A stretch of DNA of 64,000 nt from Obrimoposthia wandeli (Eukaryota). The DNA lies in contig CDROCS010002422.1 of assembly GCA_977020255.1 (NCBI GenBank), positions 62,001 through 126,000 on the forward strand, written 5' to 3'. The first letter of the stretch is position 1; the number at the start of each line of letters is the position of its first letter. Positions 33,190 to 48,946 of the stretch are shown here, in pieces. A model generated the notes under the pieces. That model did not search any database, was not told the origin of the DNA, and worked only from the letters and a program-made list of their open reading frames with translations. Made by a program: the position numbers and the translations under genes.

Positions 33190-33738
33190 GGCTTTTCATC
33201 AACTTTCCATTCTTCATCAATACGTTGTTTTATTGAGGTGCAATTCGATGTTGCTGGCGTTCCAGCCATCTTGGCCCAGACCGGATTTAATTCTACATAG
33301 CTCGTACAAGTTAAAAGTGCTTGCTCATCCAATAAGGCTTGGCTTTTAAAGCGCTCCTCCCACTAACTTTGATGGCTAAAGTTGAACAGTATTGCTGGCC
33401 CGAAGGGTGAGTGCCATGGATGGCAGCGAATATAAGCGGACTTTGCAATTATCTTCAATATTGGCTTTTCTGGCTATAAACTCATTCAGGCAACGCATGT
33501 ACCAACTAATGTCTGCTAAGCGTTTACGCCATTCATCTACAACCTGGCCTATTAAGCCATGGTGCTCTTTAGATAATTTTTCACCTTTGAAGTAGCGCTG
33601 AATTACATCTGGACCATTGTAAAGCTTGCGCCAACGCTCAATCACTTCTAGGTCGGTCAGTGCGTCGAACTCAATTTTATTTAGATAGAGCAAGAGATAA
33701 TAGTTAGACATGATCGCATAGGCACAGATATCAATACA
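33190..33738 (-). pseudogene. REP-associated tyrosine transposase (RAYT), degenerate and interrupted
   Basis: CIDICAYAIMSNYYL (HUH SNHxH motif lost)...WRKRLADISWYMRCLNEFIARKANIEDNC, then after a ~70 bp insert WEERFKSQALLDEQALLTC.SYVELNP. Confidence 0.85.
33363..33433. mobile_element. ~70 bp REP-like palindromic insert inside the RAYT gene
   Basis: Separates the codons for R-F and W-E of the GRFWEGRF motif; contains hairpins aacttt-gatggct-aaagtt and tgcca-tgga-tggca. Confidence 0.7.
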
Positions 33739-33833: not shown

Positions 33834-35084
33834 TTAATGCACGATTTTCTGAGCTAGGTTTTTATAGCTAACACTCGTCTTATCATCATTAATACAAATA
33901 CTTAGCAGGTCAGCAATGAAATAACTTAATGCTCTTTGCTCAATTCTTTTTACTTTACTTTGTTGCTCCATATTGAGCATGTGATATCTTGAAGCAGCAC
34001 CAAAATCACCAAAAATCAAATTAGCGTCTTCATCAATGAGCGTGTTGTGTGCATATAAATCACCATGGCAAACTTTGTGCTCGTGTAGGTGCTCAAATAC
34101 GTTCGTCATTTGGCTGACAATTTTTTGAATTTTTTCAATAGAGAGATAAAACCCTTCGCTAAAATTATCTCGGGTACAGCTTTCAAAACAAGGTGGTAAC
34201 CCGAGGTTTTTATAAGTATTGGGGATGAGGTTCATGACTAACGCAAGAAAATCAGGTTCGTTAACTTGTGCTAGTGACTGGATTAAGTTTGGGTGATTAC
34301 CAACCTTGAGACAAGCCTGTAATTCATCTTCGGGATAACCATCGCTAGTAATATCACCTTTAAATACTTTAACGGCGATTTCGTTAGGAAAACCGGTTGG
34401 TTGATTGTTCCATTGCGCTTTTGAAATGATACCAGAAGCACCTTGCCCAAGTACCTCACCAATATTGAGATCAGTAGAGCAAAGATTAGGTACCGTTTGA
34501 TCTTCAGTTGATGATTGGCTAAATGGGTTTCCAGCAAAGGCGAGCCACGCCAACTTTGGTAAACTTAATAGCTGATCCGGGCATTGTTTTAAATTATTAG
34601 CAGATATACGGACTAATTCAAGATTGTGTAATTGATTTAAATTTTCGGGCAGTGAAGCCAACTGATTACCAGCCAACGCCAGTTTTTGTAGTAGTTTGCG
34701 CTCACCTAAAGTGTCAGGCAGTACTTCAATTTGATTACCAGTTAATATCAACCAACGTAATTTTAATGGCAGAGAATCTGCTGGTACATAGTTAATCTGA
34801 TTTGATTTAAAGCCAATCATCTGTAAATTTGGGCATGCCCCAAGTGCTTCTGGCAAAGTCGTAAATTGATTATTTGAAGCAAATAGAATTTTTAACTTTT
34901 TAAGTTGTGCTATCTCTTTAGGTAAACTTGATAATTGGTTGTGCGATAAATCTAAAATTTCTAGACTGTCTGCTAAAGAAAGTATTTCAATCGGAAATTG
35001 GCTCAAATTATCGCTCAGGGCTAAGTGTTTAGTACCTAATAGTTTGCCACTACGTAGCTCAATAAGTGTGTGCAAAAATAACAT
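33834..35084 (-). CDS. Leucine-rich-repeat protein kinase
   Basis: N-terminal LRRs (LEILDLSHNQLSSLP etc.), kinase GQGASG, AVK, HGDLYAHN, DFG. Confidence 0.92.
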   Translation of the reverse strand: MLFLHTLIELRSGKLLGTKHLALSDNLSQFPIEILSLADSLEILDLSHNQLSSLPKEIAQLKKLKILFASNNQFTTLPEALGACPNLQMIGFKSNQINYVPADSLPLKLRWLILTGNQIEVLPDTLGERKLLQKLALAGNQLASLPENLNQLHNLELVRISANNLKQCPDQLLSLPKLAWLAFAGNPFSQSSTEDQTVPNLCSTDLNIGEVLGQGASGIISKAQWNNQPTGFPNEIAVKVFKGDITSDGYPEDELQACLKVGNHPNLIQSLAQVNEPDFLALVMNLIPNTYKNLGLPPCFESCTRDNFSEGFYLSIEKIQKIVSQMTNVFEHLHEHKVCHGDLYAHNTLIDEDANLIFGDFGAASRYHMLNMEQQSKVKRIEQRALSYFIADLLSICINDDKTSVSYKNLAQKIVH

Positions 35085-35747: not shown

Positions 35748-35847
35748 AAATAACGCCGCTATAAACGGCAAAAAATAGTTGGCTAGAATTTGTGAGGCAC
35801 GAACAAAGCCAACTGTTTTTTTGTCTGATTTGATTGCCTTGTTATGT
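35748..35847 (-). mobile_element. Integron attC site
   Basis: Minus strand ACATAACAAGGCAATCAAATCAGAC-AAAAAAACAGTTGGCT...AGCCAACTATTTTTT-GCCGTTTATAGCGGCGTTATTT: inverse core, long imperfect palindrome, GTT core. Confidence 0.85.
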
Positions 35848-35899
35848 GCCACAACGTAGTATGTACATATTAACGTACATGACCACTTTGGAGAAAATT

Positions 35900-36151
35900 A
35901 TGAATGCAATAAGCTATACCGCCGCTCGTGCAAACCTTGCTAGTACAATGGCACACGTTTGTAATGATCATGCGCCAATTATTATTACCCGTAAAAGTGA
36001 AGACCCTGTAGTTATGATGTCTCTTGAAGACTATAACGCAATGCAAGAAACAACGTACTTGCTGAGATCTCCATCCAACGCCCGTGATCTACTTGAATCT
36101 ATTGCCGAACTTGAAAGTGGCAATGGAACACAAAGAGAGCTTCTTGAATGA
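35900..36151 (+). CDS. yefM: YefM (Phd/YefM) antitoxin
   Basis: MNAISYTAARANL...VMMSLEDYNAMQETTYLLRSPSNARDLLESI. Confidence 0.95.
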   Translation: MNAISYTAARANLASTMAHVCNDHAPIIITRKSEDPVVMMSLEDYNAMQETTYLLRSPSNARDLLESIAELESGNGTQRELLE

Positions 36152-36408
36152 AACTAACTTTTTCGACCAAGGCGTGGGAACAATATACCTATTGGCAAAC
36201 CACTGATAAAAAAATATTAAAGCGTATCAATACCCTTATTAAGGATATACAGCGCTTCCCTTATGAGGGGATAGGCAAACCGGAACCACTAAAACATGGA
36301 TTATCCGGTTACTGGTCACGCCGTATTAACGATGAGCACCGTCTTGTTTATAAGCATACTGGTGACACTGTTCTAATCGCGCAACTCCGCTATCACTACG
36401 GCACATAG
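36148..36408 (+). CDS. yoeB: YoeB (Txe/YoeB) toxin
   Basis: AWEQYTYWQ...GIGKPEPLKHGLSGYWSRRINDEHRLVY...RYHY. Confidence 0.95.
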   Translation: MKLTFSTKAWEQYTYWQTTDKKILKRINTLIKDIQRFPYEGIGKPEPLKHGLSGYWSRRINDEHRLVYKHTGDTVLIAQLRYHYGT

Positions 36409-36711: not shown

Positions 36712-37686
36712 TTAACTCGGCCAGTTTCTATATTCAGGATAACAAGCTCTACCAGACTTAGTACTATGGTCAAAACTGAACACATGCTCACGTGGACTAT
36801 CAGTGCAGCTCCCAACTAACCGACCTTTCATTAAGCCGACACCTTCTTCGAGTTCAATTTTTCCTTCACATATAGGGCAAGATGCACTGTAGCTTACAAT
36901 TCTAAATTGTCGAATAGAACGTTCATTTTTATCTTTATCACCTGTTGGAACATATTCAAGTTGTGCAGTTCTGATATCTCCTGGTGTTAACATTACAGGA
37001 GCACTCACAATCCGTTTTATCACACATTGATAAAGTGGAGAGCCAAAGTAATAAACGCTAATAAGCAAACTACCAAAACCAATGATTATCTTGACCAAAG
37101 CTAACAAACTTTCAGCTTGTTGAAGAGAGTAGAGCCCAAGCAGAAGAATGAGCAAACCAAACAGGATGACTGAACTAATTCCTCCCACCAATAGCTTAAA
37201 TTTTAATCCTTGAGCTACATAATTATTTACCCACCGAGCCAAGAAATTTGGACTAGCTATTTTCTCAAGTGAATAACGAATATGTCCATTTGGTATTTCT
37301 ATATCTAACGGTTCTAAGTCTACGGAGTGCGCGGTAATTTTGTACTTATTTGGATTACCTGCACCTCCTCCTTTTTCAGTCTGCTTCAGTTTTGGCAAAA
37401 AGGAACATTCATTACCAATGGCTATTTTATTCAAAGCTGTGTATTGAACATCTAGCTCTGTTATCACTTCTGATATTAATTTTTTAAGCGTCTTCCCTTC
37501 GTTATCATGATCATTGCGCTCGGCGATATCTTGCCAAGAAAACTCAATCGTTTCATTTTTAGCAAGTTGGCCTTTAGTGTGATTAAGAATCCTCTTAATC
37601 ACACTAAATCTGCGCGCATTTGAAGTTTGCTCTTCAAGAAAAGCATATCCCGTTTTTAAAGCATCATCTAATTGATTTTCTTGCAT
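36712..37686 (-). CDS. Uncharacterised protein: wHTH-like N-terminus, two TM helices, C-terminal Cys/His (Zn-ribbon-like) domain
   Basis: GGGAGNPNKY wing-like motif; hydrophobic helices around aa 165-215; SCPIC...GSC..SPREH. Confidence 0.7.
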   Translation of the reverse strand: MQENQLDDALKTGYAFLEEQTSNARRFSVIKRILNHTKGQLAKNETIEFSWQDIAERNDHDNEGKTLKKLISEVITELDVQYTALNKIAIGNECSFLPKLKQTEKGGGAGNPNKYKITAHSVDLEPLDIEIPNGHIRYSLEKIASPNFLARWVNNYVAQGLKFKLLVGGISSVILFGLLILLLGLYSLQQAESLLALVKIIIGFGSLLISVYYFGSPLYQCVIKRIVSAPVMLTPGDIRTAQLEYVPTGDKDKNERSIRQFRIVSYSASCPICEGKIELEEGVGLMKGRLVGSCTDSPREHVFSFDHSTKSGRACYPEYRNWPS

Positions 37687-37792
37687 TAATTACCACCCCA
37701 AAACTGTTACGTCCCTGTTTAGGGCTGAAATACTACCACATAAATTGCTCAAATGGCTCTGCACTTAAGCATAAACATACGAGGAAATATAA

Positions 37793-38668
37793 ATGTGTAA
37801 TGACCAAGAGAAAGACCTCAAAGTAGGCATAAAAGAAGGTGCATTAGTCTTTATAGATGAAGTGGATAATGGGCTAAATTGTGGCTGTTTTTGCCCTCAC
37901 TGCAAAGGCATATTGATCGCCAAGAAAGGTGAAGTAAACAGCCACCATTTTGCCCATCACAAGATTGTTAACTGTGGTCAAGGTGTTGAAACAGCCCTGC
38001 ATCTTTTAGGGAAGGAAATCATAAAAACTCAAAGCTGTGTGACATTGCCTAATGGTAAAAAGCTGACCCAATTAACTAATGTGGAACTAGAAAAAAGCAG
38101 ACAAGGCTATATCGCAGATGTCGGTGCAATCATGATTAGTACAGGTGAAGAAATTGATATCGAGATCAAAGTCACACATGGGATTGATCAAAATAAACAA
38201 CACAAAATAGAAAGAAGCGGCGCACAAGTATTTGAGATAGACCTCAGCCATTTAGTTGGCGCTGATTTATCTAGATCAATAATAGTCACCGAAGTAATGA
38301 GCACAGCTCCAAGAGCATGGGCCAGAGATATTCAAACTCAAAAAAATGAAATAGCAGAGGATAACAACATGAAAGATAAACATTTAGTAGCAGGTTTTAA
38401 ATCTGTAAGCGGATACTCAAGAAAGGACCAACGTGATTTTGAATTCAACGAAATCTATATTTTGTCGGAGATAGCACCTAGTAGATCTTCCAACTACAAC
38501 GTTCATTTCAAAGGCGGCTTTGCAGTGGACAATATGTTTCTAACACCTGATGTAGAGTTATTTAAAAGACTAGAGTCAGTAACTTTCCCTGCATGGGTAG
38601 AGCTTGTTCCAGGGAGAAAAATAGTGAGAGGCAGAGTCGTAGATTTCGTAGCTGATGTAATAATTTAG
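37793..38668 (+). CDS. CoiA-like Zn-finger/PD-(D/E)xK nuclease fused to an RstB/inovirus SSB-like C-terminal domain
   Basis: CFCPHC...HHFAH, ETALH..GKEII, IADV...IDIEIKVTH; C-terminal 99 aa ending KRLESVTFPAWVEL. Confidence 0.65.
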   Translation: MCNDQEKDLKVGIKEGALVFIDEVDNGLNCGCFCPHCKGILIAKKGEVNSHHFAHHKIVNCGQGVETALHLLGKEIIKTQSCVTLPNGKKLTQLTNVELEKSRQGYIADVGAIMISTGEEIDIEIKVTHGIDQNKQHKIERSGAQVFEIDLSHLVGADLSRSIIVTEVMSTAPRAWARDIQTQKNEIAEDNNMKDKHLVAGFKSVSGYSRKDQRDFEFNEIYILSEIAPSRSSNYNVHFKGGFAVDNMFLTPDVELFKRLESVTFPAWVELVPGRKIVRGRVVDFVADVII

Positions 38669-38720
38669 TGAGCAAACCAGCTATGCATTAGCAATAGCAC
38701 TTAGCTAAGGAGGGCTACAT

Positions 38721-39053
38721 TTAGGATGTAGACCCTTCTTCTAAATCTTGAAACTCATACTTAAGGTACTGCTGTACTTTTTCAAGACCATCATCAGCTT
38801 CTGAAATCACTTCTAAAGCACTTTTACCTTTAAAGTGATCATTAGGTGCACGAAGCCAGTTCGCTGCTCTAAGCGGCTCCCATGTAGTTCCTAACAATCG
38901 GTAGATATTCAGTATTCTGGATAGACGGATAAGTGTCACATCATCTGTCAGGAACGCCTGCCGCTCAGGATCAGTTAGCTGCCATTGATCAAAAATGTTA
39001 TCGACTGTTTTTAGAGCTACTTGGAACTCTTTTGAAGAAATTGATTTTTCCAT
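38721..39053 (-). CDS. Xre/MbcA/ParS-family antitoxin (orphan)
   Basis: WLRAPNDHFKGKSALEVI...LEKVQQYL matches the DUF2384 C-terminal domain. Confidence 0.75.
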   Translation of the reverse strand: MEKSISSKEFQVALKTVDNIFDQWQLTDPERQAFLTDDVTLIRLSRILNIYRLLGTTWEPLRAANWLRAPNDHFKGKSALEVISEADDGLEKVQQYLKYEFQDLEEGSTS

Positions 39054-39436
39054 TTAGTTTCCCACTCGCCAAATTTTAAATAACAATAAGCTTTGCTTTC
39101 AAAATTGATTACATACTAAAGCAAATATCTCTCATCGCAACTTAGGCTACTCTTGCTGTCCTTGTAGTGTAAAGAATAGAAATTTATTAAACGATAATGT
39201 ATAGCATGACATTTCATTAGTTAGGTGATAGATTCAACCAATAATATTAGGTAATATTATTTATTTACAGTAACTTAAATGAATTTTCTTTTGTTTAATA
39301 ATGGCAACTAACTTCACATTTTTCTTACAAGCGAATATAAATCTAATATTGAAAACTACTTCATTGGATCCTCTAGTTTTATTTATGAATATTCTGGTAA
39401 TCTAGGGAAGGGAATGCAATTTGAGAAGGAAAGCTT

Positions 39437-40639
39437 ATGAGTATTGAGAAAACTCATTTTGATAAAACCTCGGCTGAAAAAAAATCTATAGGTTTCGATT
39501 ATCAATACTATTTCTTTTTGTGGAAAGTACTATCCCTTGAATACGGGCAGTCTGTCGGGCTAGAAGTTAAGGATGATGTTCATACTGAGTTGAATAATAG
39601 CACCCAAATACTCTATCAACTAAAGCATACTATAAGTAAAAAAGCCGACGGGAAGCCTATTAATCTAACGTCTTTAGATAAGGATTTATGGAAAACACTT
39701 TCTAATTGGATACAGGTGATTCAGGACCCTGCGGATGGAAGAAGCTCAAAAAGAGATCAAATAGAATTCATAAATAAAACTAGTTTTGTATTAGCAACCA
39801 ACAAATCATCCTCTAAATCTAATGATTTAGTGAATGCCATTTCAAGTTTTCAAAGTGGATCTAACTCAATAGAAGCTTTTAACGACTCTATAAATACACT
39901 ACTTTTGAACGCGAAAAGCAATACAATTATCGAATACATCACCAGAGTTATAAAAGTTAATAGTGATGTATTGTCTGAATTTATAAATAAAATTTATTTT
40001 GAGCTTGGTGAAGATGAAATAATTAATAAATGTAAAAATGCAATAAAGGCAGACAAGGTTCCAGAAAATAAAATCAACAGTGTATACACTTCATTAGACT
40101 CGATCATAAGAGAAGATAATTTCATAAATATTAAAAAAGGAAAAAAGATTCAAATTTCCTTTGATGACTTTTATAAAAGATATCGTAAGTACTACGATAT
40201 AGCGAGAAGCTGTACTTTATCAATTAACTCGTTTATTGGCCGTTTACCATCCAAAATGGAAGATCAAACATTCATAAGACAGCTACTAGAAATTCAGGAT
40301 GTTGATATCGCACATTTTGAGGATATTGCTGAGTTTACTACCCAAAGGTTAAAGCTTGTAAATAATATTGAAACTTGGCGTTCAGAAGGGTTACTTACCA
40401 CCGAAGAGATTGAACAGTTCCACGTAAACGCTATTCTTTGGTGGAAAAACGAACACAGGAGACAAATGAGAACTCCTGATGGAGGTAGCGCTCTCCAAGT
40501 GTTAGATTCTGCGAGGGTAAAAGAATTAACTATTTCAGGAGTTAGCTTGGGTTTGGAACTATCGAATGGATCGTTTTATGAACTTTCAAATATTCCACGT
40601 ATTGGCTGGAGAAAAGATTGGGTGAAGTATAAATCATGA
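39437..40639 (+). CDS. lmuA: Lamassu/ABC-3C effector: Cap4-like nuclease plus C-terminal domain
   Basis: SIGFDYQY...VGLEVKDDVH...ILYQLKH nuclease motifs; C-terminal FYELSN..RIGW.KDW; coupled to the next two genes by 4-nt overlaps. Confidence 0.75.
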   Translation: MSIEKTHFDKTSAEKKSIGFDYQYYFFLWKVLSLEYGQSVGLEVKDDVHTELNNSTQILYQLKHTISKKADGKPINLTSLDKDLWKTLSNWIQVIQDPADGRSSKRDQIEFINKTSFVLATNKSSSKSNDLVNAISSFQSGSNSIEAFNDSINTLLLNAKSNTIIEYITRVIKVNSDVLSEFINKIYFELGEDEIINKCKNAIKADKVPENKINSVYTSLDSIIREDNFINIKKGKKIQISFDDFYKRYRKYYDIARSCTLSINSFIGRLPSKMEDQTFIRQLLEIQDVDIAHFEDIAEFTTQRLKLVNNIETWRSEGLLTTEEIEQFHVNAILWWKNEHRRQMRTPDGGSALQVLDSARVKELTISGVSLGLELSNGSFYELSNIPRIGWRKDWVKYKS

Positions 40640-41079
40640 GTTTGAGTATTTATAATAATTTTGGGACAGGTGCTTTAGCAATAGTTGCTGTGTTAAACGA
40701 GTGTAAATCATTACCTATTGCTAAAGTGACTTTGATTTTTCCAATCATATCTCATTCTGACCTTCTAAATTACTTAAGCCATTCATCAGCAAAAGTTAAG
40801 AGTTTAGATAAATTAATTGTTGAAAAAACTATGTGCTTCTCTAATTTTAATAAGCGCTATTACGATTCTCTATCTAGCACTTTCAATGCCCTACAATATC
40901 TACATGATCTAGGTTACGTGGAGTTTACAGAGAATGAAATCTACTTAATAAAGCCTGTAGAATATTCTCCAACCATGGGTAAGCGCACAAAAAAAATCTT
41001 CTTGGCTTCTAAAAATTTAAGCTCGATTCTAAATGATCTGGTTGAGAAGCTATACCTAAATTTAAGGATTGAGTTGTGA
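40636..41079 (+). CDS. lmuC: ABC-3C middle component
   Basis: 147 aa gene between effector and ATPase (IYNNFGTG..AI...KSLPIAK..LIFPII). Confidence 0.75.
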   Translation: MSLSIYNNFGTGALAIVAVLNECKSLPIAKVTLIFPIISHSDLLNYLSHSSAKVKSLDKLIVEKTMCFSNFNKRYYDSLSSTFNALQYLHDLGYVEFTENEIYLIKPVEYSPTMGKRTKKIFLASKNLSSILNDLVEKLYLNLRIEL

Positions 41080-43029
41080 AGTTTAATATAGAAAAAATTA
41101 TTCTCTGGTTACGGAATGGAAAACGTAGAGAAATAAAATTTCTCCCTAACAAAGTCAATGTAATTACAGGTGATAGTAATACAGGTAAAACTGCTATTTT
41201 AGAAATTATTGATTATTGTTTCTTTGCATCTAAATCGAAAATTTCTGAAAGTATGATCAATGAAAACATTGGCTGGTATGGATTGACATTCAATATTAAT
41301 GATAAAAGATACACTATCGCAAGAAAGAGTTTGGATAACACAAAAGTATCCAACGAGTACTATTTTTCATCTATTGGTGAAAGTCCAGCCCAGCTGGAAG
41401 CAAATAATACAAGCGATGCAATAAAAACATTATTAGAGAATGAGTTTTCTATTGATAGAAAAGTTTCAGTATCTTACGGTAGTAATATTATTAGACCTGG
41501 TTCAAAAATATCTTTAAGGTATTTCTTATTATTTAATACCATATCTGGCAATATTATAGAAAGCGACTCTGGAATATTTTTTGATAAACAAAATGAAGCT
41601 AGATACAGAGATGCCCTACCTAGGATATTTGATTTAGCCGTAGGTATTGAAACTGTAGAAAATATTTTAAAAAAGGAAAAACAGGTAGATCTACAAAAGA
41701 AAATAAACGCCTTACTTAAAGCAAGCAAAATAATTTCAGATAAATCGACTGCGTTTAAATCAGAAAAAGAAAGTTTGATTAAAAAATCAAAAGAATTTTC
41801 TATAATACCAGAAGAACTAGACTTTGACTCCTCTATTAATAGACTTAAGGAAGAAATCAGCAATACCGATAAAAAACCTAACAACATAGGTTCACGAAGT
41901 GAACTAGAAAAAGAGTATTATATTTTAGAAAGAAAAATCAGGAATTTAAAATCATTTTCAAAAGAACATGCTTCTTTTAAGAAAAACCTTATTAACATCG
42001 AAGACAGCCTAAAGCCTATACAATTTTTAAAAGAAAGAGATAGCGAACTTCTAAAAACTTCAGTATTCGAAGATTTGCTGGAGTCCTATGCTAAAGAATT
42101 ACATGAAATAAAAGTAGCCAGAAAAAATAAAACTCCTATAGACAGGCAGGTTACCGATGCTATTGAAGAATATGAGAGTAGATTAAAAACATTACGGACG
42201 ACATTATTAATACTGCCGACCAGAGCCAAGAGCTTCGAAAACGAAAAATCTAAGTATATGTTCTTAGGGGAAGTAAAAGCTAAGCTAAATATTTTTTCTG
42301 ATAATAAAGATTCAATATTAACCAAAACAGATGATAAAATCGAAGTTTTAAGAGAAAATAATACTGAACTTTCTAATTCAGTCGGACTCTATTATGCTGC
42401 ATACAGCCGACTAGCAGCAAGCATCATACTAAGCATGAAGTTAAAAATCAACTAGTGAATTAAACAGCTCTCCCAGAATATAGAAATCATGATATCTAGC
42501 AGCTAAAGCCATCGAGATATCTAGTAAAAACCTGTTTTTGAATAAATAAAACAAACTCTGATGACGAAAGCACAAGTCTCTTGTTGTCTTGGAGATTACG
42601 AAAGCCAAGCAGTAAAAATCATATGGAAGCAGTTACTAATTTATTTCTCTACTGATAAAAATCTTTTTTTAACTCAAGAAGTCAACTAACTGAAGCATCT
42701 TGCAAGAAGTAGCTCTCCTACGTAAATCTACCTTTTAAATGCAAGTAGCTTTGCCATATTTAGTTATTGATCAACCTAGTCGTCCATATTATGGGGAAGA
42801 CCCTACATCAAAAAGAGCTAACATAGATCATAGCGATGAAACTAAAATCACCAAAGCATTCGAATTGTTAAATAATTTCATCCAAACAAGAAGAGATAAC
42901 GACTCTGAATTTCAGATGATTATTTTTGAGCATGTACCTACACGCATATTTGATGGTTTTGATAACATTCATGTCGTTGAAGAATTTCGAGATGGTAATG
43001 CTTTAATTCCCGAATGTTTGTTGAGCTAA
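41076..43029 (+). pseudogene. lmuB: Lamassu SMC-like ABC ATPase (DUF3732), broken by an anomalous segment
   Basis: Walker A ITGDSNTGKT and coiled coil in 41076-42455; Walker B YLVIDQPSRPYY and IIFEH in 42739-43029, in a different frame. Confidence 0.8.
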
Positions 43030-43122
43030 AAATACTTCAAGCTACTTGATCTTATATTACTGATGCCATGACAACACTATTACAGATATTGAACCTTTAA
43101 TCCTACTGAGGCCTTTGTTAAT

Positions 43123-45247
43123 ATGGAGTTTATATTACTTCCTAGTAATTCCGCGATACCAAGCTCAAACACAAGTACTGCTTTTCTAAAAATTGATAAC
43201 TGGAACGATTACTCATTTGTAACCCAGTTTTCATTAAGCGTCCGAGATGAAAAAGGAGTTTTGCATAATATAGGAAAATTGAAGATAGGTTTTAAAGGAC
43301 AGACTATAGAAAAATCGACCCATGGTGAGTTAGAGAGTAACTTCACGACATTATCGGGCAATTTTTTTTCAGCTGGTAATTCAGTAGACTATTACAACAC
43401 TTTGAATTTATTATCTGAAACTCTAAAAAACAACATACTAAACTCGTTACGCGACTTATCATATATACCTTCGTTGATAGAATATGTGAAAGGAGAAACT
43501 GTTTTTAAACATTCTCTTCTAAGAGATATTAGTTTGACAACGTTAAAGGGGAAATACGCAAGAGTAATCGCTAGAATGCCTGAGTTAAGCAATTTTAACT
43601 TTTCTTTTAAGCGCTTAGCATCTGAAGATTTAGCCTCTATTGATCTTGATTTTAAGGTTACTGAAAATTCAAAACCAAGCACTAATATACATGCATTAAT
43701 AGGAAGAAATGGATCAGGTAAAACAACGATTATAAAAAATCTCGGCCGCAAGCGACCGAGTTTGTAGAACAGCCCGAGCTGCTTACTATTTAATTCACTT
43801 TGTTCATGACCAATAGTTATTCGAACATATTTTCGTATTACTTCTTCTGCTAGCATTTCCAATTGTTTCCACGAAATAACTTTTGAGTCCACAGCTTCCT
43901 CCCCAGAAATACTTCTTTATAGCGGGGTGTAATCGAAAAACTCTTGAGCCAAAATACTTTTAAATACTTGCATCACATAAGATGGTGCTATTTTTGGATT
44001 TGTTCGCACTACCATATGAATATGATCAATAGGAATTTCAAGCTCTATAATTTCTATATCATAGTCATATCCAATTTTTTGGATAATCGCTTAAGATCAG
44101 CTCTAATGGCTCAACAAATACTTTATGGCGATACTTTGGAATCCAAACAAAAATGATACATTAATCTGAAAAAACATGGTGTGAATTTCGATACTCATAA
44201 GCTGAATATTCTTACAATGACTTCGTCATTGTACGCTATCCAGCTCGGGGGCAAGCCCCCGAGATTTACGCTATGCGGTTAAACGGAATGATTAAATCCA
44301 TCACCAATAAAACTGATACTTTGGGTCAATTTATTGATAAAGATTCAGATGAAAGCTTACCAATAACTGATGATTATTTCAGTAGATTAGTATCTGTTTC
44401 ATTCAGTGCATTTGATCCTTTTGAGCCTCCAAAAGAACAGTCAGACCCATCGAAAGGAACTTGCTACTTCTATGTAGGTTTAAAGAATATTAATGGTGAT
44501 GATTCCCTAAGAACAATTTCTGAATTAAGATTTGAATTCGTAAAGAATATCATTCACTGCTTTATGAATAAAACTAAAGAAAAGTCATGGCTTTCTGCAA
44601 TTAATAAACTTGGATCAGACGATAATTTTTCATCAATGAATTTAAGCAAGTTGAAAGATGAGTACTATAAATTTAAAGATATAGTTAATGCTACACAACC
44701 AGATGAAGATGGCTTTAGAGATGCTTTTTTACATCATATTGAAGATGAATTATCAAACATGAGCTCTGGGCATGCGATTGTTTTGTTCACCATTACTAAA
44801 CTTGTAGCTACTGTTGAGGAAAAAACTCTTGTACTAATCGATGAGCCTGAGGGTCATTTACATCCTCCTTTGCTTTCTTCATTCATAAGAGCACTCAGTG
44901 AATTACTATATGATCAGAATGGAGTGGCAATTATTGCAACCCACTCACCTGTTGTTATGCAAGAGATACCACAATCTTGTGCTTGGATCATAAATCGTTT
45001 TGGTCATGCTTTAACACCTTACCGACCTAAATTAGAAACTTTTGGCGAAAACGTAGGGATTTTAACTCGTGAGGTTTTCGGTTTAGAAGTTACAAACTCT
45101 GGATACCATGACATATTGCATAAGTCAGTGCAGAGCGGGGGGACTTATCAGGAAATATTAGAGGCCTATGATAACCAGCTAGGATTAGAAGCAAGAGCAA
45201 TACTAAAATCAATGGTGTTATTTCGAGATAGCGAGTTACAAAAATGA
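43123..45247 (+). pseudogene. ptuA: Septu PtuA-like AAA ATPase split by IS200
   Basis: Removing 43732-44278 gives in-frame GRNGSGKTTI|LNGMIK; C-half has LIDEPEGHLHPPLL and ATHSPVV. Confidence 0.85.
43732..44278 (-). mobile_element. tnpA: IS200/IS605-family element (tnpA only, frameshifted), 547 bp
   Basis: Fragments YHFVWIPKYRHK, DHIHMVV (HUH), YFWGGKLWTQSYFV, EEVIRKYV; subterminal hairpins ctcggccgcaagcgaccgag (43741) and ctcgggggcaagcccccgag (44244). Confidence 0.92.
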
Positions 45248-46134
45248 GAATGCTATCTAAACCACCGTATAGTCTAACAGACGTACTTCACAAATGTACT
45301 GAGGGTATGGCTAAAGATAGTACTAAAGCGCCATTCTTAAATGCCTTAAATAACCTTATCGAAAAGGGCGACGAGTACCTTTTATATGGCCAAGATGGCC
45401 AACTCTATAGAATTCCATATTCAGGGAAACCTAACAATACAGAAATCATTGTTAGGCCATTGTCTAAAAAGACACTGATAGGGCTTTATGAGAATTATTT
45501 AAGGAGCAAAAAAAATCCAGCACGGATAATATGGGAAGAACTTATTGCTTCTGCCAAAGAAAGCTGCCCTTTTTGTGGCGATATAGGGCGACCTACAAAC
45601 TTGGACCATTTCTTACCAAAAGCTCATTTTCCTCAGTTTTCTATCTTACCTATAAACCTTATACCATCATGTTCAGACTGCAACTCTGGTGAAAAAGGTA
45701 ATGATTTTACTTTAACAGCACAAGACCAAATTATTCACCCATACCTAGATAAAAGTCATTTCTTTGAAGAGCAATGGGTAACTGCTAAATATATAAATGA
45801 AGATGAAGGGGCTATTGTGTACTCTGTAAACCCGCCTGCAGATTGGAACATAGATGACAAAGCCAGAGTTGAAGAGCATTTTAAATCTTTAAATTTAGCC
45901 AAAAGATATAGTATTGAAGCAGCGAGTCACTTGAGCGAAATAATAAGCCTAAGAAACGCTTCTTACTCTAGCACAAGAAAGCTAATTCCAAATATAGAAG
46001 AGTCATCTTTAATTACTCACTTTTTAGATACAACTATTACTCCTATATCGACTGGACCATTATTTGCTAACCATTGGAAAAAAACAATGTACGCTACCTT
46101 AGCTAACACTGAAGAGTTTCTAAAACCTAGATAG
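45244..46134 (+). CDS. ptuB: HNH endonuclease (Septu PtuB-like)
   Basis: CPFCG...LDHFLPK..FP.FSILP.NLIPSCSDCN, IIHPYLD; overlaps the ATPase stop. Confidence 0.85.
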   Translation: MRMLSKPPYSLTDVLHKCTEGMAKDSTKAPFLNALNNLIEKGDEYLLYGQDGQLYRIPYSGKPNNTEIIVRPLSKKTLIGLYENYLRSKKNPARIIWEELIASAKESCPFCGDIGRPTNLDHFLPKAHFPQFSILPINLIPSCSDCNSGEKGNDFTLTAQDQIIHPYLDKSHFFEEQWVTAKYINEDEGAIVYSVNPPADWNIDDKARVEEHFKSLNLAKRYSIEAASHLSEIISLRNASYSSTRKLIPNIEESSLITHFLDTTITPISTGPLFANHWKKTMYATLANTEEFLKPR

Positions 46135-46377
46135 AGTTATTAGCAGTTGCATTTAAATACAGGCTCCCTAACTATTCTTTATAATTGCTAGAAACACAGT
46201 AATACAACCTCTATTGGAAAATCAAATTCCTAAAAAACACCAAAAACCGCTACAACCCATACCCGACTATGCCTAGAAGATTCCAAACTTTTCTGAACTC
46301 AGTTCAAGTACAGTTTGGAAATTACACTCACAAAAAATCAAAAAACACCTCAAAACTCTTTACCTTAAAAGAAAAAC

Positions 46378-46395
46378 GTACTATCGTACTAGTAC
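46378..46395. promoter_or_regulatory. TrpR operator
   Basis: GTACT-N8-AGTAC, same geometry as E. coli trp GAACT-N8-AGTAC, directly before the trpR ATG. Confidence 0.75.
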
Positions 46396-46677
46396 ATGAA
46401 TACACTATACCGAAAACAAGTTCTCGCATTGCTCTGTAACATCGATAACCACGATGAAATGGCGGCCGCCCTCGATATCCTGCTCACTGATAAAGAACAG
46501 CAAGATGTTGATCAGCGCCTGCAAATATTTCATATGTTGGAAACCCAAGTACCACAACGGGAAATATCCACTAAGCTCGGCGTGGGGATTGCCACCGTGA
46601 CGCGAGGTGCTAAAGCGATGCGCACAGACAGCTATAAGACCATTGCACAATTACTGCGCTCGGTGATACAGCGTTAA
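46396..46677 (+). CDS. trpR: Trp repressor
   Basis: LLTDKEQ....RLQI...L...PQREI...LGVGIATVTRG. Confidence 0.85.
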   Translation: MNTLYRKQVLALLCNIDNHDEMAAALDILLTDKEQQDVDQRLQIFHMLETQVPQREISTKLGVGIATVTRGAKAMRTDSYKTIAQLLRSVIQR

Positions 46678-46840
46678 AAACAAGCTCAAACTCCTCATTT
46701 ATAATTATAAACTGCGGATTTTCGCTTATTTTTGCCTTGCCTCACCTTCCCTCGCTACTTCGTGCAAAGCTCTTAATACATAAAACACACCGATAAATTG
46801 GCTCACTGTTGTAAAGACGCTGAGTAAAAATAGGTTAAAC

Positions 46841-48235
46841 ATGATCACTAAACCACTGCCGAAGATTGAGTTACCCGGCAAGCCCACATATTTAAAATTG
46901 ACTGAAGATTTTGACTTTTTTCAGCTGTTTCGCAGTATCGAAGCTAAATACGATAACTGCTTTATCTTAGAATCTCTCGGTGAAGAGAGCTATGTTTCAC
47001 GCCACCATATAATCGGTTTTGACCCTGAGCAAACCTTGTATGCCAAAGATTATAAAACCTTATGTATTCAAGATAATGCCACCGGTATTGTAGAAGAATA
47101 TCCTTGCGATAACCCCTACTATGAGCTGCGCAAAATAGTACCGCAAAACATTATTTCCAAACGCTATGCCGGCGGGATTGTCGGCTATTTAGGTTATGAT
47201 GCGGTTAACTTCTTTGAACCTAAGTTGAATGTTCAGCCAAGTGATTTATTTCAGCCATTTAAGTTTGGTGTGTATAAAGACGGCCTTGTTTACGATCATA
47301 TGACAGGGGAAATCTTTTACTATTATTACACTGATAACCGCTTTGCAGAGGTTGAGTCACTGCTGCATTTAGCGCAGCAGCCTTATGGTGATACTAGCAC
47401 TGTGTGCCTAGGCGATTCTATGTCTCGTGAAGAGCATGAAGCCTCGGTATTAAAGGTAAAGCAAGATATTATCAACGGCCGTATTTTTCAGACGGAAGTC
47501 GGTTTTAAAACCCGCTATAAAATTAAGGGCGATTGCACACAGCTTTATGCAAAATTGCGTGAAGTTAACCCGTCCCCTTATATGTATTACATGAAGTTTG
47601 GCGAGCAGAAAATCATTGGTGCTTCACCTGAATTACTGTTTCGCTTAAGCGATGGCGAAATGGAAACCTTTCCACTGGCAGGCACAGCAAAACGCGGTGC
47701 TAATGCGGCTGAAGATACGCAATTAGCGCGTGCCTTGCTCAATGATCCTAAAGAGATTGCCGAGCATAATATGCTGGTTGATTTGCATCGCAATGATATT
47801 GGCCGCGTGGCTAAATTTGGCACCGTGACTGTGCGTAATTTAATGTCGATTAAACGCTATTCACACGTGCAGCATATCTCTACTGAGATCTTCGGCATTA
47901 TGGCGGATAAAGAAGATATGTTTTCAGCACTGGCTTCTAACTTCCCGGCGGGCACTTTATCGGGTGCGCCTAAAATGGAAGCGATGAAGATCATTGATGA
48001 GCTTGAACCTGATGGTCGCGGCCCTTATGGTGGCGCGTTAGGCGAGTTTAGTTTTAACGGTGATTGCACCTTTGCTATTCCTATTCGCACCGTGTTTATC
48101 AATGGCGAAGAGGGTTATGCACAAACCAGTGGCGGTAATGTTTACGATTCTAACGCTGCGGATGAGTATTTAGAAATTCAACGAAAATTATCTGCTATGC
48201 GCAAAGTGCTAGCCTATTTTGAGGAGGCGAAATAA
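46841..48235 (+). CDS. trpE: Anthranilate synthase component I
   Basis: LESLG, NPSPYMY, PLAGTAKRG, EIAEHNMLVDLHRND, FPAGTLSGAPK; linked to trpR with its operator. Confidence 0.85.
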   Translation: MITKPLPKIELPGKPTYLKLTEDFDFFQLFRSIEAKYDNCFILESLGEESYVSRHHIIGFDPEQTLYAKDYKTLCIQDNATGIVEEYPCDNPYYELRKIVPQNIISKRYAGGIVGYLGYDAVNFFEPKLNVQPSDLFQPFKFGVYKDGLVYDHMTGEIFYYYYTDNRFAEVESLLHLAQQPYGDTSTVCLGDSMSREEHEASVLKVKQDIINGRIFQTEVGFKTRYKIKGDCTQLYAKLREVNPSPYMYYMKFGEQKIIGASPELLFRLSDGEMETFPLAGTAKRGANAAEDTQLARALLNDPKEIAEHNMLVDLHRNDIGRVAKFGTVTVRNLMSIKRYSHVQHISTEIFGIMADKEDMFSALASNFPAGTLSGAPKMEAMKIIDELEPDGRGPYGGALGEFSFNGDCTFAIPIRTVFINGEEGYAQTSGGNVYDSNAADEYLEIQRKLSAMRKVLAYFEEAK

Positions 48236-48885
48236 TGCGCGTTTTAATCATTGATAATTACGATTCTTTTACCTTTAATTTGTATCAGTACGTGGGCGAC
48301 ATTTTATCGCGTGAGCTTGAAGGGCAAACCTTTGAAGTGGTTGTGAAACGCAACGATGAAATTGGCTTAGATGAAATTCGACAACTCGCTTTTGATCGCA
48401 TCATTATTTCCCCAGGCCCTGGTACACCTGAAGATATTGCCTATTTTGGCATTTGTTCGCAAGTGATTAAAAAGCTTGGGGTTCACACGCCAGTATTAGG
48501 CGTTTGCCTAGGTATGCAAGGTATTGCGCACTGTTTTGGCGCTAAAGTGGTACTGGCCGGTGTGCCAATGCACGGTAAAGTATCGCCTATCAAACACGAT
48601 GAGCAAGGGGTGTATCAAGGGGTTCCACAACAGCTTGAAATTATGCGCTATCACTCGTTAATGGTGGATGTAAATACTTTGCCAGAGTGTTTAGAAATCA
48701 CTTCGGTGATTGATGATGAATACGCGGTTGGCACAAGTGACTTTAAACAAGCCGCACTTAACGGCAGTGAAATAATGGGCGTAAGGCACGTTGATTACCC
48801 TATTGAAGGCATACAGTACCATCCTGAATCCTTTGCCACTGAAGGCGGAAAAACCTTATTGAAAAATTTTTTATTACATAGATGA
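48235..48885 (+). CDS. trpG: Anthranilate synthase component II (glutamine amidotransferase)
   Basis: IDNYDSFT, ISPGPG, GVCLG, RYHSL, QYHPES. Confidence 0.9.
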   Translation: MRVLIIDNYDSFTFNLYQYVGDILSRELEGQTFEVVVKRNDEIGLDEIRQLAFDRIIISPGPGTPEDIAYFGICSQVIKKLGVHTPVLGVCLGMQGIAHCFGAKVVLAGVPMHGKVSPIKHDEQGVYQGVPQQLEIMRYHSLMVDVNTLPECLEITSVIDDEYAVGTSDFKQAALNGSEIMGVRHVDYPIEGIQYHPESFATEGGKTLLKNFLLHR

Positions 48886-48890
48886 TTTGG

Positions 48891-48946
48891 GTCGTGAGTC
48901 GTGAGTCGTGAGTCGTGAGTCGTGAGTCGTGAGTCGTGAGTCGTGA
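48891..48946. repeat. Heptamer VNTR (GTCGTGA)x8
   Basis: Eight perfect units, then a hairpin CGTGAGTAT-N8-ATACTCACG. Confidence 0.98.

What the first reader, a model, noticed from the sequence alone, without database searches (positions are those of the whole stretch)
37793..38668. CoiA-like nuclease fused to an RstB/inovirus SSB-like domain with its own internal in-frame start
Seen: an in-frame ATG at 38369 preceded by GAGGA at Shine-Dalgarno spacing would give a separate 99 aa protein (MKDKHLVAGFKSVSGYSRK...FKRLESVTFPAWVEL). From memory this resembles CTX/RS1 RstB (V.G....G.S.K...KLE...FP..V). Known: Ff phage makes pX from an internal start in gene II. Inference: one gene may make both a ssDNA-targeted nuclease and a free SSB-like protein acting as regulator, decoy or replication factor.
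Basis: partly seen in the sequence, partly recalled or inferred. Interest (0 to 1): 0.7.

Follow-up and report, generated by a model that had tools for sequence, protein, structure and literature searches.

The report
Nuclease–SSB fusion gene with internal start
A bacterial gene in a defence island fuses a CoiA-like DNA-cutting enzyme to a filamentous-phage-type single-strand-DNA-binding domain. A conserved second ribosome-binding site at the domain boundary probably lets it also make the binding domain alone, and it always sits beside an unknown membrane protein.

Summary
ORF 37793-38668 (+, 291 aa) has an in-frame ATG at 38369, 7 nt after GAGGA (38357-38361). The gene's own start has the same motif and spacing.

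- **N-terminal half:** a CoiA-type zinc finger plus a PD-(D/E)xK nuclease core.
- **Residues 193-291:** a confident OB fold. It matches phage RstB profiles across the family and, by fold, small free-standing viral SSBs of 87-99 aa.
- **Internal start, short-linker clade:** 30 of 35 proteins keep the Met. One replaces it with Val encoded by GTG behind AAGGAG. Glu codons at the SD position are always GAG. The surrounding mRNA is among the least structured 1-11% of each gene.
- **Internal start, long-linker sister clade:** none of these signals is present.
- **Neighbour:** a divergent 324-aa membrane/zinc-ribbon gene (36712-37686, -) accompanies the gene in 31 of 33 loci, in variable islands. Here those islands hold Lamassu, Septu and toxin-antitoxin genes.

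Best reading: a two-gene, probably defensive, ssDNA-directed nuclease cassette that makes both the full-length enzyme and a free OB protein. Translation of the short product and the function are inferred, not shown.

The parts
36712..37686 (-). Conserved divergent partner gene, 324 aa. It has a soluble N-terminal domain with a glycine-rich motif (invariant G108, G110), a 59-residue hydrophobic hairpin (aa 160-218, window 37033-37209) and a C-terminal Cys/Cys/Cys/His zinc-ribbon-like domain (C270, C273, C294, H301 invariant).
   Evidence: Found head-to-head with the nuclease gene in 28 of 29 loci and in 3 of 3 further loci. Alignment and invariant residues. Hydropathy. No Pfam, PADLOC or PDB sequence match.
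37687..37792 (.). 106-bp divergent intergenic region. It holds the nuclease gene's SD (GAGGA 37781-37785, 7-nt spacer) and a hairpin at 37746-37771.
   Evidence: Promoter-like matches in the region are no more frequent than in shuffles.
37793..38668 (+). Full-length gene, 291 aa: CoiA-type zinc finger, PD-(D/E)xK nuclease core, disordered linker and RstB-like OB domain.
37886..37975 (+). CoiA_N zinc finger (aa 32-61). C34, C37, H51, H52, H55 and C61 are invariant.
   Evidence: Pfam PF25164, 28.6 bits against a cutoff of 26.3. Found in 46 of 46 relatives. Invariant residues.
37976..38341 (+). PD-(D/E)xK-type nuclease core and helical tail (aa 62-183). E66, H70, K74, E100, D109, E124, H129 and K135 are invariant.
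   Evidence: Invariant residues. AF2 model pLDDT 85. Foldseek PDB hits to ACE1 (Cas4 family), RecU and PA endonuclease at E about 7e-3 to 5e-2. Homology to proteins annotated as CoiA family over aa ~9-176.
38342..38368 (+). Disordered interdomain linker (aa 184-192) that carries the internal Shine-Dalgarno GAGGA at 38357-38361.
   Evidence: pLDDT below 50 for residues 184-192 only. SD conservation. SD and ATG are unpaired in the predicted mRNA fold.
38369..38668 (+). Internal in-frame start (ATG 38369-38371) and the RstB-like OB domain (aa 193-291). This would be the separate 99-aa product.
   Evidence: phrog_929 E 1.9e-6. Family-level PF07459 and phrog_929 matches. Domain model pLDDT 93 with OB topology. 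Fold neighbours are SSB, PriB, gene V protein and viral RstB-like proteins. Start-site signatures.

Best explanation
The locus is a conserved two-gene cassette that moves between variable or defence islands of marine and methanotrophic Gammaproteobacteria.

Gene 1 (37793-38668) encodes a cytoplasmic enzyme with three parts: a CoiA-type zinc finger, a PD-(D/E)xK nuclease core and, after a 9-residue disordered linker, an OB-fold ssDNA-binding domain of the filamentous-phage RstB type.

Shown: this architecture; its homology and fold assignments; the conservation of an SD plus start codon exactly at the domain boundary; and the strict linkage to a divergent membrane/zinc-ribbon gene.

Inferred: ribosomes start both at 37793 and at 38369, giving a ~33-kDa nuclease-OB protein and a free ~11-kDa OB protein. 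The OB domain directs the nuclease to single-stranded DNA, such as rolling-circle or entering ssDNA of filamentous phages, plasmids or other mobile DNA. Small phage SSBs act as dimers that bind cooperatively (established for Ff gene V protein). The free OB protein would therefore co-assemble with, or compete against, the fused domain. That would set the ratio of nuclease to binder on ssDNA and limit damage to the host's own ssDNA, much as Ff pX tempers pII. The membrane partner is inferred to anchor or regulate the enzyme at the inner membrane.
For: Architecture:
- CoiA_N is above threshold and present in 46 of 46 relatives.
- D109 and E124 are invariant, matching the catalytic D and E reported for CoiA (bioRxiv 10.1101/2024.02.06.579203).
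- PD-(D/E)xK fold hits were found, though weak.
- The OB domain model has pLDDT 93.
- All top-50 PDB fold hits are OB ssDNA binders.
- BFVD top hits are 87-99-aa free-standing viral SSBs, including an inovirus SSB and an 'RstB-like protein'.
- PF07459 is hit by 41 of 46 relatives and phrog_929 by 28 of 28.
- RstB is an ssDNA-binding protein (PMC3089051).

Internal start:
- The ATG is aligned in 15 DNA loci, with GAGGA-, AAGGAG- or GGGAG-like motifs at about -12 to -8, although the linker residues differ.
- 12 of 15 have an SD of -5 kcal/mol or stronger, against 13 of 69 other in-frame ATGs.
- All 13 distinct loci (12 plus L170) with Glu at the SD position use GAG. Elsewhere in 15 of these genes GAG:GAA is 113:269.
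- 30 of 35 short-linker proteins keep the Met, in a linker whose other columns are 16-38% conserved.
- One 'exception' (P0018) has Val encoded by GTG behind AAGGAG, with SD -9.3.
- L005 has an ATG 8 codons upstream with SD -8.0.
- The mRNA from -25 to +20 is in the least structured 1-11% of windows in 13 of 13 short-linker genes. In the long-linker clade, which lacks the SD-ATG, the median is 57%.
- The Met lies within 3 residues of profile position 1 of the free-standing phage proteins.
- The only disordered stretch of the model ends at residue 192.

Cassette and context:
- The partner gene is present in 28 of 29 loci plus 3 of 3 further loci.
- Neighbours are Lamassu, Septu, YefM/YoeB, HigBA, Mrr, HNH, integrases and restriction-modification genes.
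- A CoiA-domain protein is a validated E. coli defence gene (PMC9519451).
Against: - No expression data exist, so the short product is not observed.
- The test that isolates codon choice alone is modest (Fisher p = 0.018).
- The long-linker clade (Colwellia, Thalassotalea, Ferrimonas) has the same two genes without the SD-ATG. A free OB protein is therefore not essential to the family.
- Two short-linker members (P0038, P0025) have lost it.
- Fold-search E-values against solved structures are weak: 0.06-0.4 for the OB domain and 7e-3 for the nuclease.
- Neither gene matches any PADLOC model, and the defence role rests on context only.
- The partner's function is unknown.
Confidence: 0.55

Rival explanations
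1. Only the full-length protein is made. The boundary Met is kept for structural reasons, as the first residue of the OB domain. The SD-like motif is a by-product of an acidic Glu/Asp-rich linker, and the low mRNA structure comes from its A-rich composition.
For: - The synonymous-codon resampling test gives individual p-values of mostly 0.1-0.6.
- The linker is rich in Glu, Asp, Asn and Lys.
- The sister clade functions without the signal.
- 13 of 69 other in-frame ATGs also have SD-like motifs.
Against: - The Met sits at the edge of a disordered linker and is far more conserved than its neighbours.
- The one Met-to-Val change uses GTG behind a strong SD.
- GAG is used 13 of 13 times at the SD position, against about 30% elsewhere.
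- The contrast in mRNA structure between the two clades is not explained by protein constraints.
Confidence: 0.2
2. The SD-ATG is a fossil of the fusion event. An rstB-like gene captured from a filamentous phage once lay downstream of a CoiA-like nuclease gene and was fused by loss of the stop codon. Its old ribosome-binding site survives without current function.
For: - The Met coincides, within 3 residues, with the N-terminus of the free-standing phage family profiles.
- Free-standing viral homologues are 87-99 aa.
- The signal has decayed in the long-linker clade and in a few short-linker members.
Against: - Members that keep the signal are only 35-50% identical overall, and their linker residues are scrambled. 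A neutral relic should have decayed.
- ATG-to-GTG replacement and the relocation of an SD-ATG 8 codons upstream look like maintenance.
- No natural split version was found; the four short hits are fragments of fused genes.
Confidence: 0.1
3. The cassette is not defensive. It would be a recombination, repair or DNA-uptake factor: a CoiA-like D-loop or ssDNA endonuclease with its own SSB domain, anchored near the membrane to process incoming or damaged DNA.
For: - CoiA is an ssDNA or D-loop endonuclease of natural transformation.
- The protein has an OB ssDNA-binding domain.
- The membrane partner could place it near DNA-uptake machinery.
Against: - True CoiA is restricted to Bacillota, and other bacteria use YraN.
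- The Pfam CoiA nuclease and C-terminal domains are absent.
- The cassette is sporadic, lies in variable islands with toxin-antitoxin, restriction and Lamassu genes, and differs in neighbours between close relatives.
Confidence: 0.15

Closest known systems
RstB of filamentous vibriophage CTXphi (Pfam PF07459 CTX_RstB; PHROG 929) and other small inovirus ssDNA-binding proteins
   Same: The C-terminal 99 residues match these family profiles: phrog_929 at E 1.9e-6 for the window copy, and 28 of 28 and 41 of 46 relatives at family level. They are predicted to have the same small OB fold and the same size as the free-standing viral proteins.
   Different: - Here the domain is fused behind a nuclease in a chromosomal gene.
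- No rstA-, rstR- or other inovirus-type gene is seen among the gene's neighbours in the window.
- The window copy is below Pfam's own threshold.
- tblastn against 50,697 phage genomes found nothing.
CoiA, competence-induced PD-(D/E)xK D-loop resolvase of Bacillota
   Same: It has the N-terminal Cys/His zinc finger (PF25164), a PD-(D/E)xK core with an invariant Asp on one strand and Glu on the next, and homology over the N-terminal ~175 residues.
   Different: - There is no match to the CoiA nuclease model PF06054.
- The CoiA C-terminal region is replaced by an OB domain.
- The hosts are Gammaproteobacteria, and the gene lies in an island rather than a competence regulon.
Ff (f1/M13) gene II / gene X: in-frame internal initiation giving a C-terminal-domain protein that modulates the full-length enzyme (established knowledge)
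   Same: An in-frame start with its own SD inside a DNA-processing enzyme gene would yield a protein identical to the C-terminal part of the long product. The system concerns ssDNA.
   Different: - The short product here would be an SSB-type OB domain, not part of a replication initiator.
- The gene is bacterial.
- Production of the short protein is inferred, not demonstrated.
CoiA-domain anti-phage gene found by functional selection in E. coli (Vassallo et al. 2022, PMC9519451)
   Same: A CoiA-related domain is used in phage defence, and the gene lies in accessory or defence regions.
   Different: The window protein and its partner match no PADLOC v2 model. That system is not reported to carry an RstB-like domain or a membrane partner.
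Bacterial SSB, PriB and Ff gene V protein (OB-fold ssDNA binders)
   Same: The predicted topology is the same: five strands with a helix between strands 3 and 4. All top-50 PDB fold neighbours belong to this group.
   Different: Similarity is at fold level only (E 0.06-0.4, TM 0.3-0.47). There is no sequence similarity.

Membership tests
CTX_RstB / inovirus ssDNA-binding protein (PF07459, phrog_929) | The window protein itself scores above Pfam's curated threshold | tested here: not met
   12.4-12.5 bits against a cutoff of 26.2, E 0.2, although it covers profile positions 4-78 of 92.
CTX_RstB / inovirus ssDNA-binding protein (PF07459, phrog_929) | Significant profile similarity of the domain family | tested here: met
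   phrog_929 E 1.9e-6 for the window copy and 28 of 28 relatives at E <= 0.01, best 5e-14. PF07459 is hit by 27 of 28 domains at E <= 1, best 2e-10, and by 41 of 46 full-length relatives at E <= 0.1.
CTX_RstB / inovirus ssDNA-binding protein (PF07459, phrog_929) | Small OB-fold SSB structure | tested here: met
   This is a prediction only. The AF2 domain model has pLDDT 93 and OB topology. BFVD hits have E 1.5e-4 to 3e-3 and TM 0.49-0.66, to 87-99-aa viral SSB or RstB-like proteins. PDB hits are all OB ssDNA binders but weak.
CTX_RstB / inovirus ssDNA-binding protein (PF07459, phrog_929) | Free-standing small protein encoded in a filamentous-phage replication/integration module | tested here: not met
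   The domain is fused to a nuclease, and no inovirus-type gene is seen among the window neighbours. No full-length relative was found in viral contigs. Only one relative (L170) lies near a weak Rep/G2P hit.
CTX_RstB / inovirus ssDNA-binding protein (PF07459, phrog_929) | Binds single-stranded DNA | not testable with these tools
   This would need a structure with ssDNA or a binding measurement.
CoiA competence protein | N-terminal Cys/His zinc finger (PF25164) | tested here: met
   28.6 bits against a cutoff of 26.3. Found in 46 of 46 relatives. C34, C37, H51, H52, H55 and C61 are invariant.
CoiA competence protein | CoiA nuclease domain (PF06054), with the CoiA C-terminal region | tested here: not met
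   No hit in the window protein at E <= 1 or in any of the 46 relatives at E <= 0.1. The C-terminal region is an OB domain instead.
CoiA competence protein | PD-(D/E)xK fold with catalytic Asp and Glu | tested here: met
   D109 and E124 are invariant. The N-terminal half is homologous to proteins annotated as CoiA family, at E 1e-21 to 1e-27. Fold hits to RecU, Cas4-family ACE1 and PA endonuclease are weak, at E about 7e-3 with probability up to 0.93. Catalysis is not tested.
CoiA competence protein | Restricted to Bacillota and part of the competence pathway | tested here: not met
   The hosts are Oceanospirillales, Methylococcales, Alteromonadales and Vibrio. The context is islands with toxin-antitoxin and defence genes.
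In-frame internal initiation producing a C-terminal-domain protein (Ff gene II/X type) | In-frame start codon with SD at functional spacing | tested here: met
   ATG at 38369, GAGGA at 38357-38361, 7-nt spacer, identical to the gene's main start. Both are unpaired in the predicted mRNA fold.
In-frame internal initiation producing a C-terminal-domain protein (Ff gene II/X type) | The start signal is conserved among relatives beyond what protein constraints explain | tested here: met
   Short-linker clade: 30 ATG plus 1 GTG among 35 proteins. SD is present in 12 of 15 DNA loci. GAG is used 13 of 13 times at the SD position, against GAG:GAA of 113:269 elsewhere. The mRNA is unstructured at the site. 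The signal is absent in the long-linker clade. The synonymous-only test is modest, p = 0.018.
In-frame internal initiation producing a C-terminal-domain protein (Ff gene II/X type) | The short protein is actually produced | not testable with these tools
   No expression data were available.
Catalogued anti-phage defence systems (PADLOC-DB v2) | Match to a model of a known or candidate system | tested here: not met
   No hit for the nuclease-OB protein. The partner had none either: 23 members were scanned and only chance-level hits were found.

The most novel reading that the evidence does not exclude
A previously undescribed two-gene immune system in which bacteria have captured a filamentous phage's own ssDNA-binding protein (RstB type) and welded it to a CoiA-like nuclease, so as to find and cut single-stranded mobile DNA at the membrane. 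Programmed dual initiation within one gene would supply free OB subunits that tune or gate the nuclease.
Probability: 0.25. Interest if true: 0.8.

Novelty: new variant of a known kind. Interest (0 to 1): 0.6.

Why it matters
Defence against ssDNA elements (filamentous phages, rolling-circle plasmids, conjugative or transforming DNA) is poorly understood compared with defence against tailed phages. A nuclease that carries a phage-derived SSB as its targeting module would be a clear case of a host recruiting a viral protein against ssDNA invaders.

The conserved internal start would add a bacterial chromosomal example of the 'long enzyme plus short C-terminal modulator from one gene' design known from Ff gene II/X. 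It also comes with a natural control, because the sister clade lacks the signal. The strictly linked membrane partner of unknown fold defines a new protein family to characterise.

If the internal start proves unused, what remains is still an undescribed domain fusion and gene pair, but of ordinary interest.

Tried and rejected
- **Sequence search of the protein and of the domain profile against PDB.** It gave only chance hits to antibody heavy chains.
- **Word-indexed search with the 99-aa product alone.** No candidates. No database entry annotates it as a separate protein.
- **Exhaustive phmmer of the 99 aa.** It gave 18 hits. Nearly all were 290-350-aa fusions of the same family. Two giant proteins (P0121, P0124) had repeat-like partial matches and no relevant domains, and were treated as spurious.
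- **Profile search for free-standing versions.** Four short hits were found. From their sequences, P0134-P0136 carry linker or nuclease-tail residues and lie in decayed copies in defence regions; P0137 is a 60-aa fragment. None is a true split gene.
- **tblastn of the OB domain against phage genomes.** No match.
- **Full-length protein against plasmids.** Only the N-terminal half matched.
- **Viral contigs.** Only N-terminal nuclease relatives were found.
- **Idea that the partner's zinc ribbon is homologous to the CoiA_N finger.** hhalign gave 9% probability, limited to the CPxC knuckle, so it was rejected.
- **Internal promoter.** sigma-70-like matches are no more frequent than in shuffles.
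- **Look-up of P0011.** Not on record.
- **Full-length Foldseek.** Too weak for the OB domain, so a domain-only model was made.

Full report
**1. The observation**

ORF 37793..38668 (+) encodes 291 aa. An in-frame ATG lies at 38369-38371, and GAGGA lies at 38357-38361, 7 nt upstream. The product from that ATG is 99 aa. The gene's annotated start has the same GAGGA (37781-37785) with the same 7-nt spacer and the same predicted anti-SD energy, -5.9 against -5.8 kcal/mol.

**2. The domains**

- **Zinc finger.** Pfam finds the CoiA N-terminal zinc finger at aa 32-61, above its curated threshold. All 46 aligned relatives have it.
- **Nuclease core.** The alignment shows invariant C34, C37, H51, H52, H55 and C61 (zinc site), and invariant E66, H70, K74, E100, D109, E124, H129 and K135. 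The Asp/Glu pair is the arrangement reported as catalytic for CoiA, a PD-(D/E)xK ssDNA and D-loop endonuclease restricted to Bacillota (bioRxiv 10.1101/2024.02.06.579203).
- **Homology of the N-terminal half.** Many proteins annotated as CoiA family match only this half. No member matches the Pfam CoiA nuclease model.
- **Full-length model.** The AlphaFold model has pLDDT 85, and its only disordered internal stretch is residues 184-192, directly before Met193. Its PDB fold neighbours are PD-(D/E)xK nucleases (Cas4-family ACE1, RecU, PA endonuclease), but weakly.
- **C-terminal domain, sequence.** The window copy hits Pfam CTX_RstB only at E 0.2 but hits PHROG 929 ('RstB') at E 1.9e-6. At family level the link is solid: 27 of 28 isolated domains and 41 of 46 full-length relatives hit PF07459 (best E 2e-10), and 28 of 28 hit phrog_929 (best 5e-14).
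- **C-terminal domain, fold.** A domain-only model has pLDDT 93 and OB topology, five strands with a helix between strands 3 and 4. All top-50 PDB neighbours are OB ssDNA binders (SSB, PriB, PrgE, Rim1, Ff gene V protein), at weak E-values. In BFVD the best hits are free-standing 87-99-aa viral proteins: an unnamed 99-aa protein (E 1.5e-4, TM 0.66), the SSB of Thermus phage OH3, and an 'RstB-like protein'.
- RstB is an ssDNA-binding protein needed for CTXphi integration (PMC3089051).

**3. Conservation of the internal start**

About 60 full-length relatives exist. They fall into two groups:
- a short-linker group: Oceanospirillales, Methylococcales and a Vibrio MAG;
- a long-linker group: Colwellia, Thalassotalea, Cognaticolwellia and Ferrimonas.

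DNA was obtained for 33 loci. Five lines of evidence bear on the short-linker group.

- **Start codon and SD.** 15 loci have an ATG aligned with 38369. Each is preceded at about -12 to -8 by motifs such as GAGGA, AAGGAG, GGGAG or GAGGG, although the linker residues differ from locus to locus. 12 of 15 have an anti-SD duplex of -5 kcal/mol or stronger, against 13 of 69 other in-frame ATGs. In most genes only 3-8% of codons have as good an upstream SD.
- **Codon choice.** The 13 distinct loci with Glu at the SD position (12 plus L170) all use GAG. Elsewhere in 15 of these genes GAG:GAA is 113:269. In three loci the flanking Glu codons are GAA and only the SD-forming one is GAG.
- **Protein-level conservation.** 30 of 35 short-linker proteins keep the Met, while neighbouring linker columns reach only 16-38% for their commonest residue.
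- **The exceptions.** P0018 has Val encoded by GTG behind AAGGAG, with SD -9.3. L005 has an ATG 8 codons upstream with SD -8.0, and L007 has that same Met with a weak SD. P0038 and P0025 have lost the signal.
- **mRNA structure.** The -25..+20 segment around the internal ATG is in the least structured 1-11% (median 5.7%) of windows in all 13 short-linker genes tested. At the aligned boundary of 11 long-linker genes, which lack the SD-ATG, the median is 57%. In the window the SD and ATG are unpaired.

A stricter test that keeps the amino acids and resamples only synonymous codons is modest: p = 0.01-0.6 per gene, Fisher p = 0.018 over 8 lineages. The loci are related, so none of these counts is a true probability.

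The Met coincides, within 3 residues, with position 1 of the free-standing phage family profiles.

**4. Fused or split?**

An exhaustive phmmer search with the 99 aa returned almost only 290-350-aa fusions. A profile search restricted to 55-173-aa proteins found four hits. By sequence and context, P0134-P0136 are fragments of decayed fused genes and P0137 is a 60-aa fragment. No natural split pair was seen. No full-length relative was found in viral contigs or in phage genomes.

**5. What surrounds it**

- **Partner gene.** The divergent neighbour 36712..37686 (-), 324 aa, is present head-to-head in 28 of 29 loci analysed and in 3 of 3 further ones. All other neighbours vary.
- **Partner features.** It has a soluble N-terminal domain with a glycine-rich motif, a 59-residue hydrophobic hairpin (aa 160-218) and a C-terminal domain with invariant C270, C273, C294 and H301. 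It matches nothing in Pfam, PADLOC or PDB sequences. Its zinc ribbon is not demonstrably related to CoiA_N.
- **Window context.** The pair lies between a YefM/YoeB module and an orphan Xre/MbcA/ParS-type antitoxin gene, next to Lamassu (LmuA, LmuC, LmuB) and Septu-like genes.
- **Other genomes.** Neighbours include integrases, HigBA, Mrr, HNH and restriction-modification genes.
- **Synteny.** The closest genome (CP093399, 80% identity) is syntenic, with trpR, trpE and trpG downstream, but lacks the Lamassu/Septu block.
- **Precedent.** A CoiA-domain protein has been validated as an E. coli anti-phage gene (PMC9519451).

**6. Interpretation**

Shown:
- the fusion architecture;
- the family-level RstB and OB assignment;
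- a clade-specific, multiply supported translation-initiation signature at the domain boundary;
- a strictly linked membrane partner;
- the island context.

Inferred:
- the gene yields both a ~33-kDa nuclease-OB protein and a free ~11-kDa OB protein;
- the OB domain targets the nuclease to ssDNA of mobile elements;
- the free domain co-assembles with, or competes against, the fused one to tune activity, by analogy with Ff pII/pX and with the dimeric, cooperative gene V protein (established knowledge);
- the partner anchors or regulates the enzyme at the membrane.

Rivals are a protein-level by-product, a fossil ribosome-binding site from the fusion, and a recombination or uptake role instead of defence.

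**7. Novelty**

No paper or catalogue found here describes this fusion, its partner or its internal start. The ingredients are known: PD-(D/E)xK defence nucleases, OB SSBs and in-frame internal starts. The finding is therefore a new variant of known kinds.

**8. Note on procedure**

In one search my script printed, for 24 alignment columns around the boundary, the commonest residue with its share. All sequences handled were natural sequences as returned by the tools.

Noticed in passing
window 36712-37686 (-): A 324-aa membrane/zinc-ribbon protein of unknown family is strictly linked head-to-head to the nuclease-OB gene across 31 of 33 loci. It has no Pfam, PADLOC or PDB match.
   Followed up: yes
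window 39437-43029 (+): Lamassu-type system: LmuA (39437-40639), LmuC (40636-41079) and LmuB. LmuB appears interrupted once, into two ORFs. The first matches the N-terminal three quarters of the LmuB profile and a 96-aa ORF matches its C-terminal end (DUF3732).
   Followed up: partly
window 43123-46134 (+): Septu-like PtuA appears split into an N-terminal ORF (PADLOC PtuA / PDC-M01A, profile positions 1-207 of about 510) and a separate ORF with the C-terminal AAA_21/AAA_15 part. A 296-aa ORF without any Pfam hit follows.
   Followed up: partly
window 38721-39053 (-): Xre/MbcA/ParS-type antitoxin gene with no room for a cognate toxin gene. It converges on the 3' end of the nuclease-OB gene. The same arrangement is present in the closest genome (L169) but not in more distant loci.
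   Followed up: partly
window 35834-36408 (+): Intact-looking YefM (Phd/YefM antitoxin) and YoeB toxin pair, immediately upstream of the cassette.
   Followed up: no
window 33834-35084 (-): A 416-aa protein that combines leucine-rich repeats with a eukaryotic-type protein kinase domain. A 111-aa ORF (33376-33711, -) with no Pfam hit lies beside it.
   Followed up: no
L169 (CP093399) versus window 38700-48900: The closest genome is syntenic: partner, nuclease-OB gene and Xre antitoxin, then trpR/trpE/trpG further on. The window carries extra Lamassu and Septu-like genes in between, so this is a hot spot for defence-gene insertion.
   Followed up: partly
L170:1-338 (-): In one metagenomic relative the cassette lies next to a gene with a weak match to the filamentous-phage replication protein family (REP_ORF2-G2P). 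This may be a neighbouring inovirus-like element.
   Followed up: no
window 37746-37771: A 10-bp-stem hairpin in the divergent intergenic region, just upstream of the nuclease gene's SD. It may be an operator or an attenuator. Its conservation was not examined.
   Followed up: no
L011, L012, L088, L089, L117 (about 21 nt into the OB domain): Some long-linker genes have an ATG 7 codons inside the first OB strand, preceded by GAAGGA-like motifs (SD about -5.5). Starting there would truncate the domain, and it was judged probably fortuitous.
   Followed up: partly
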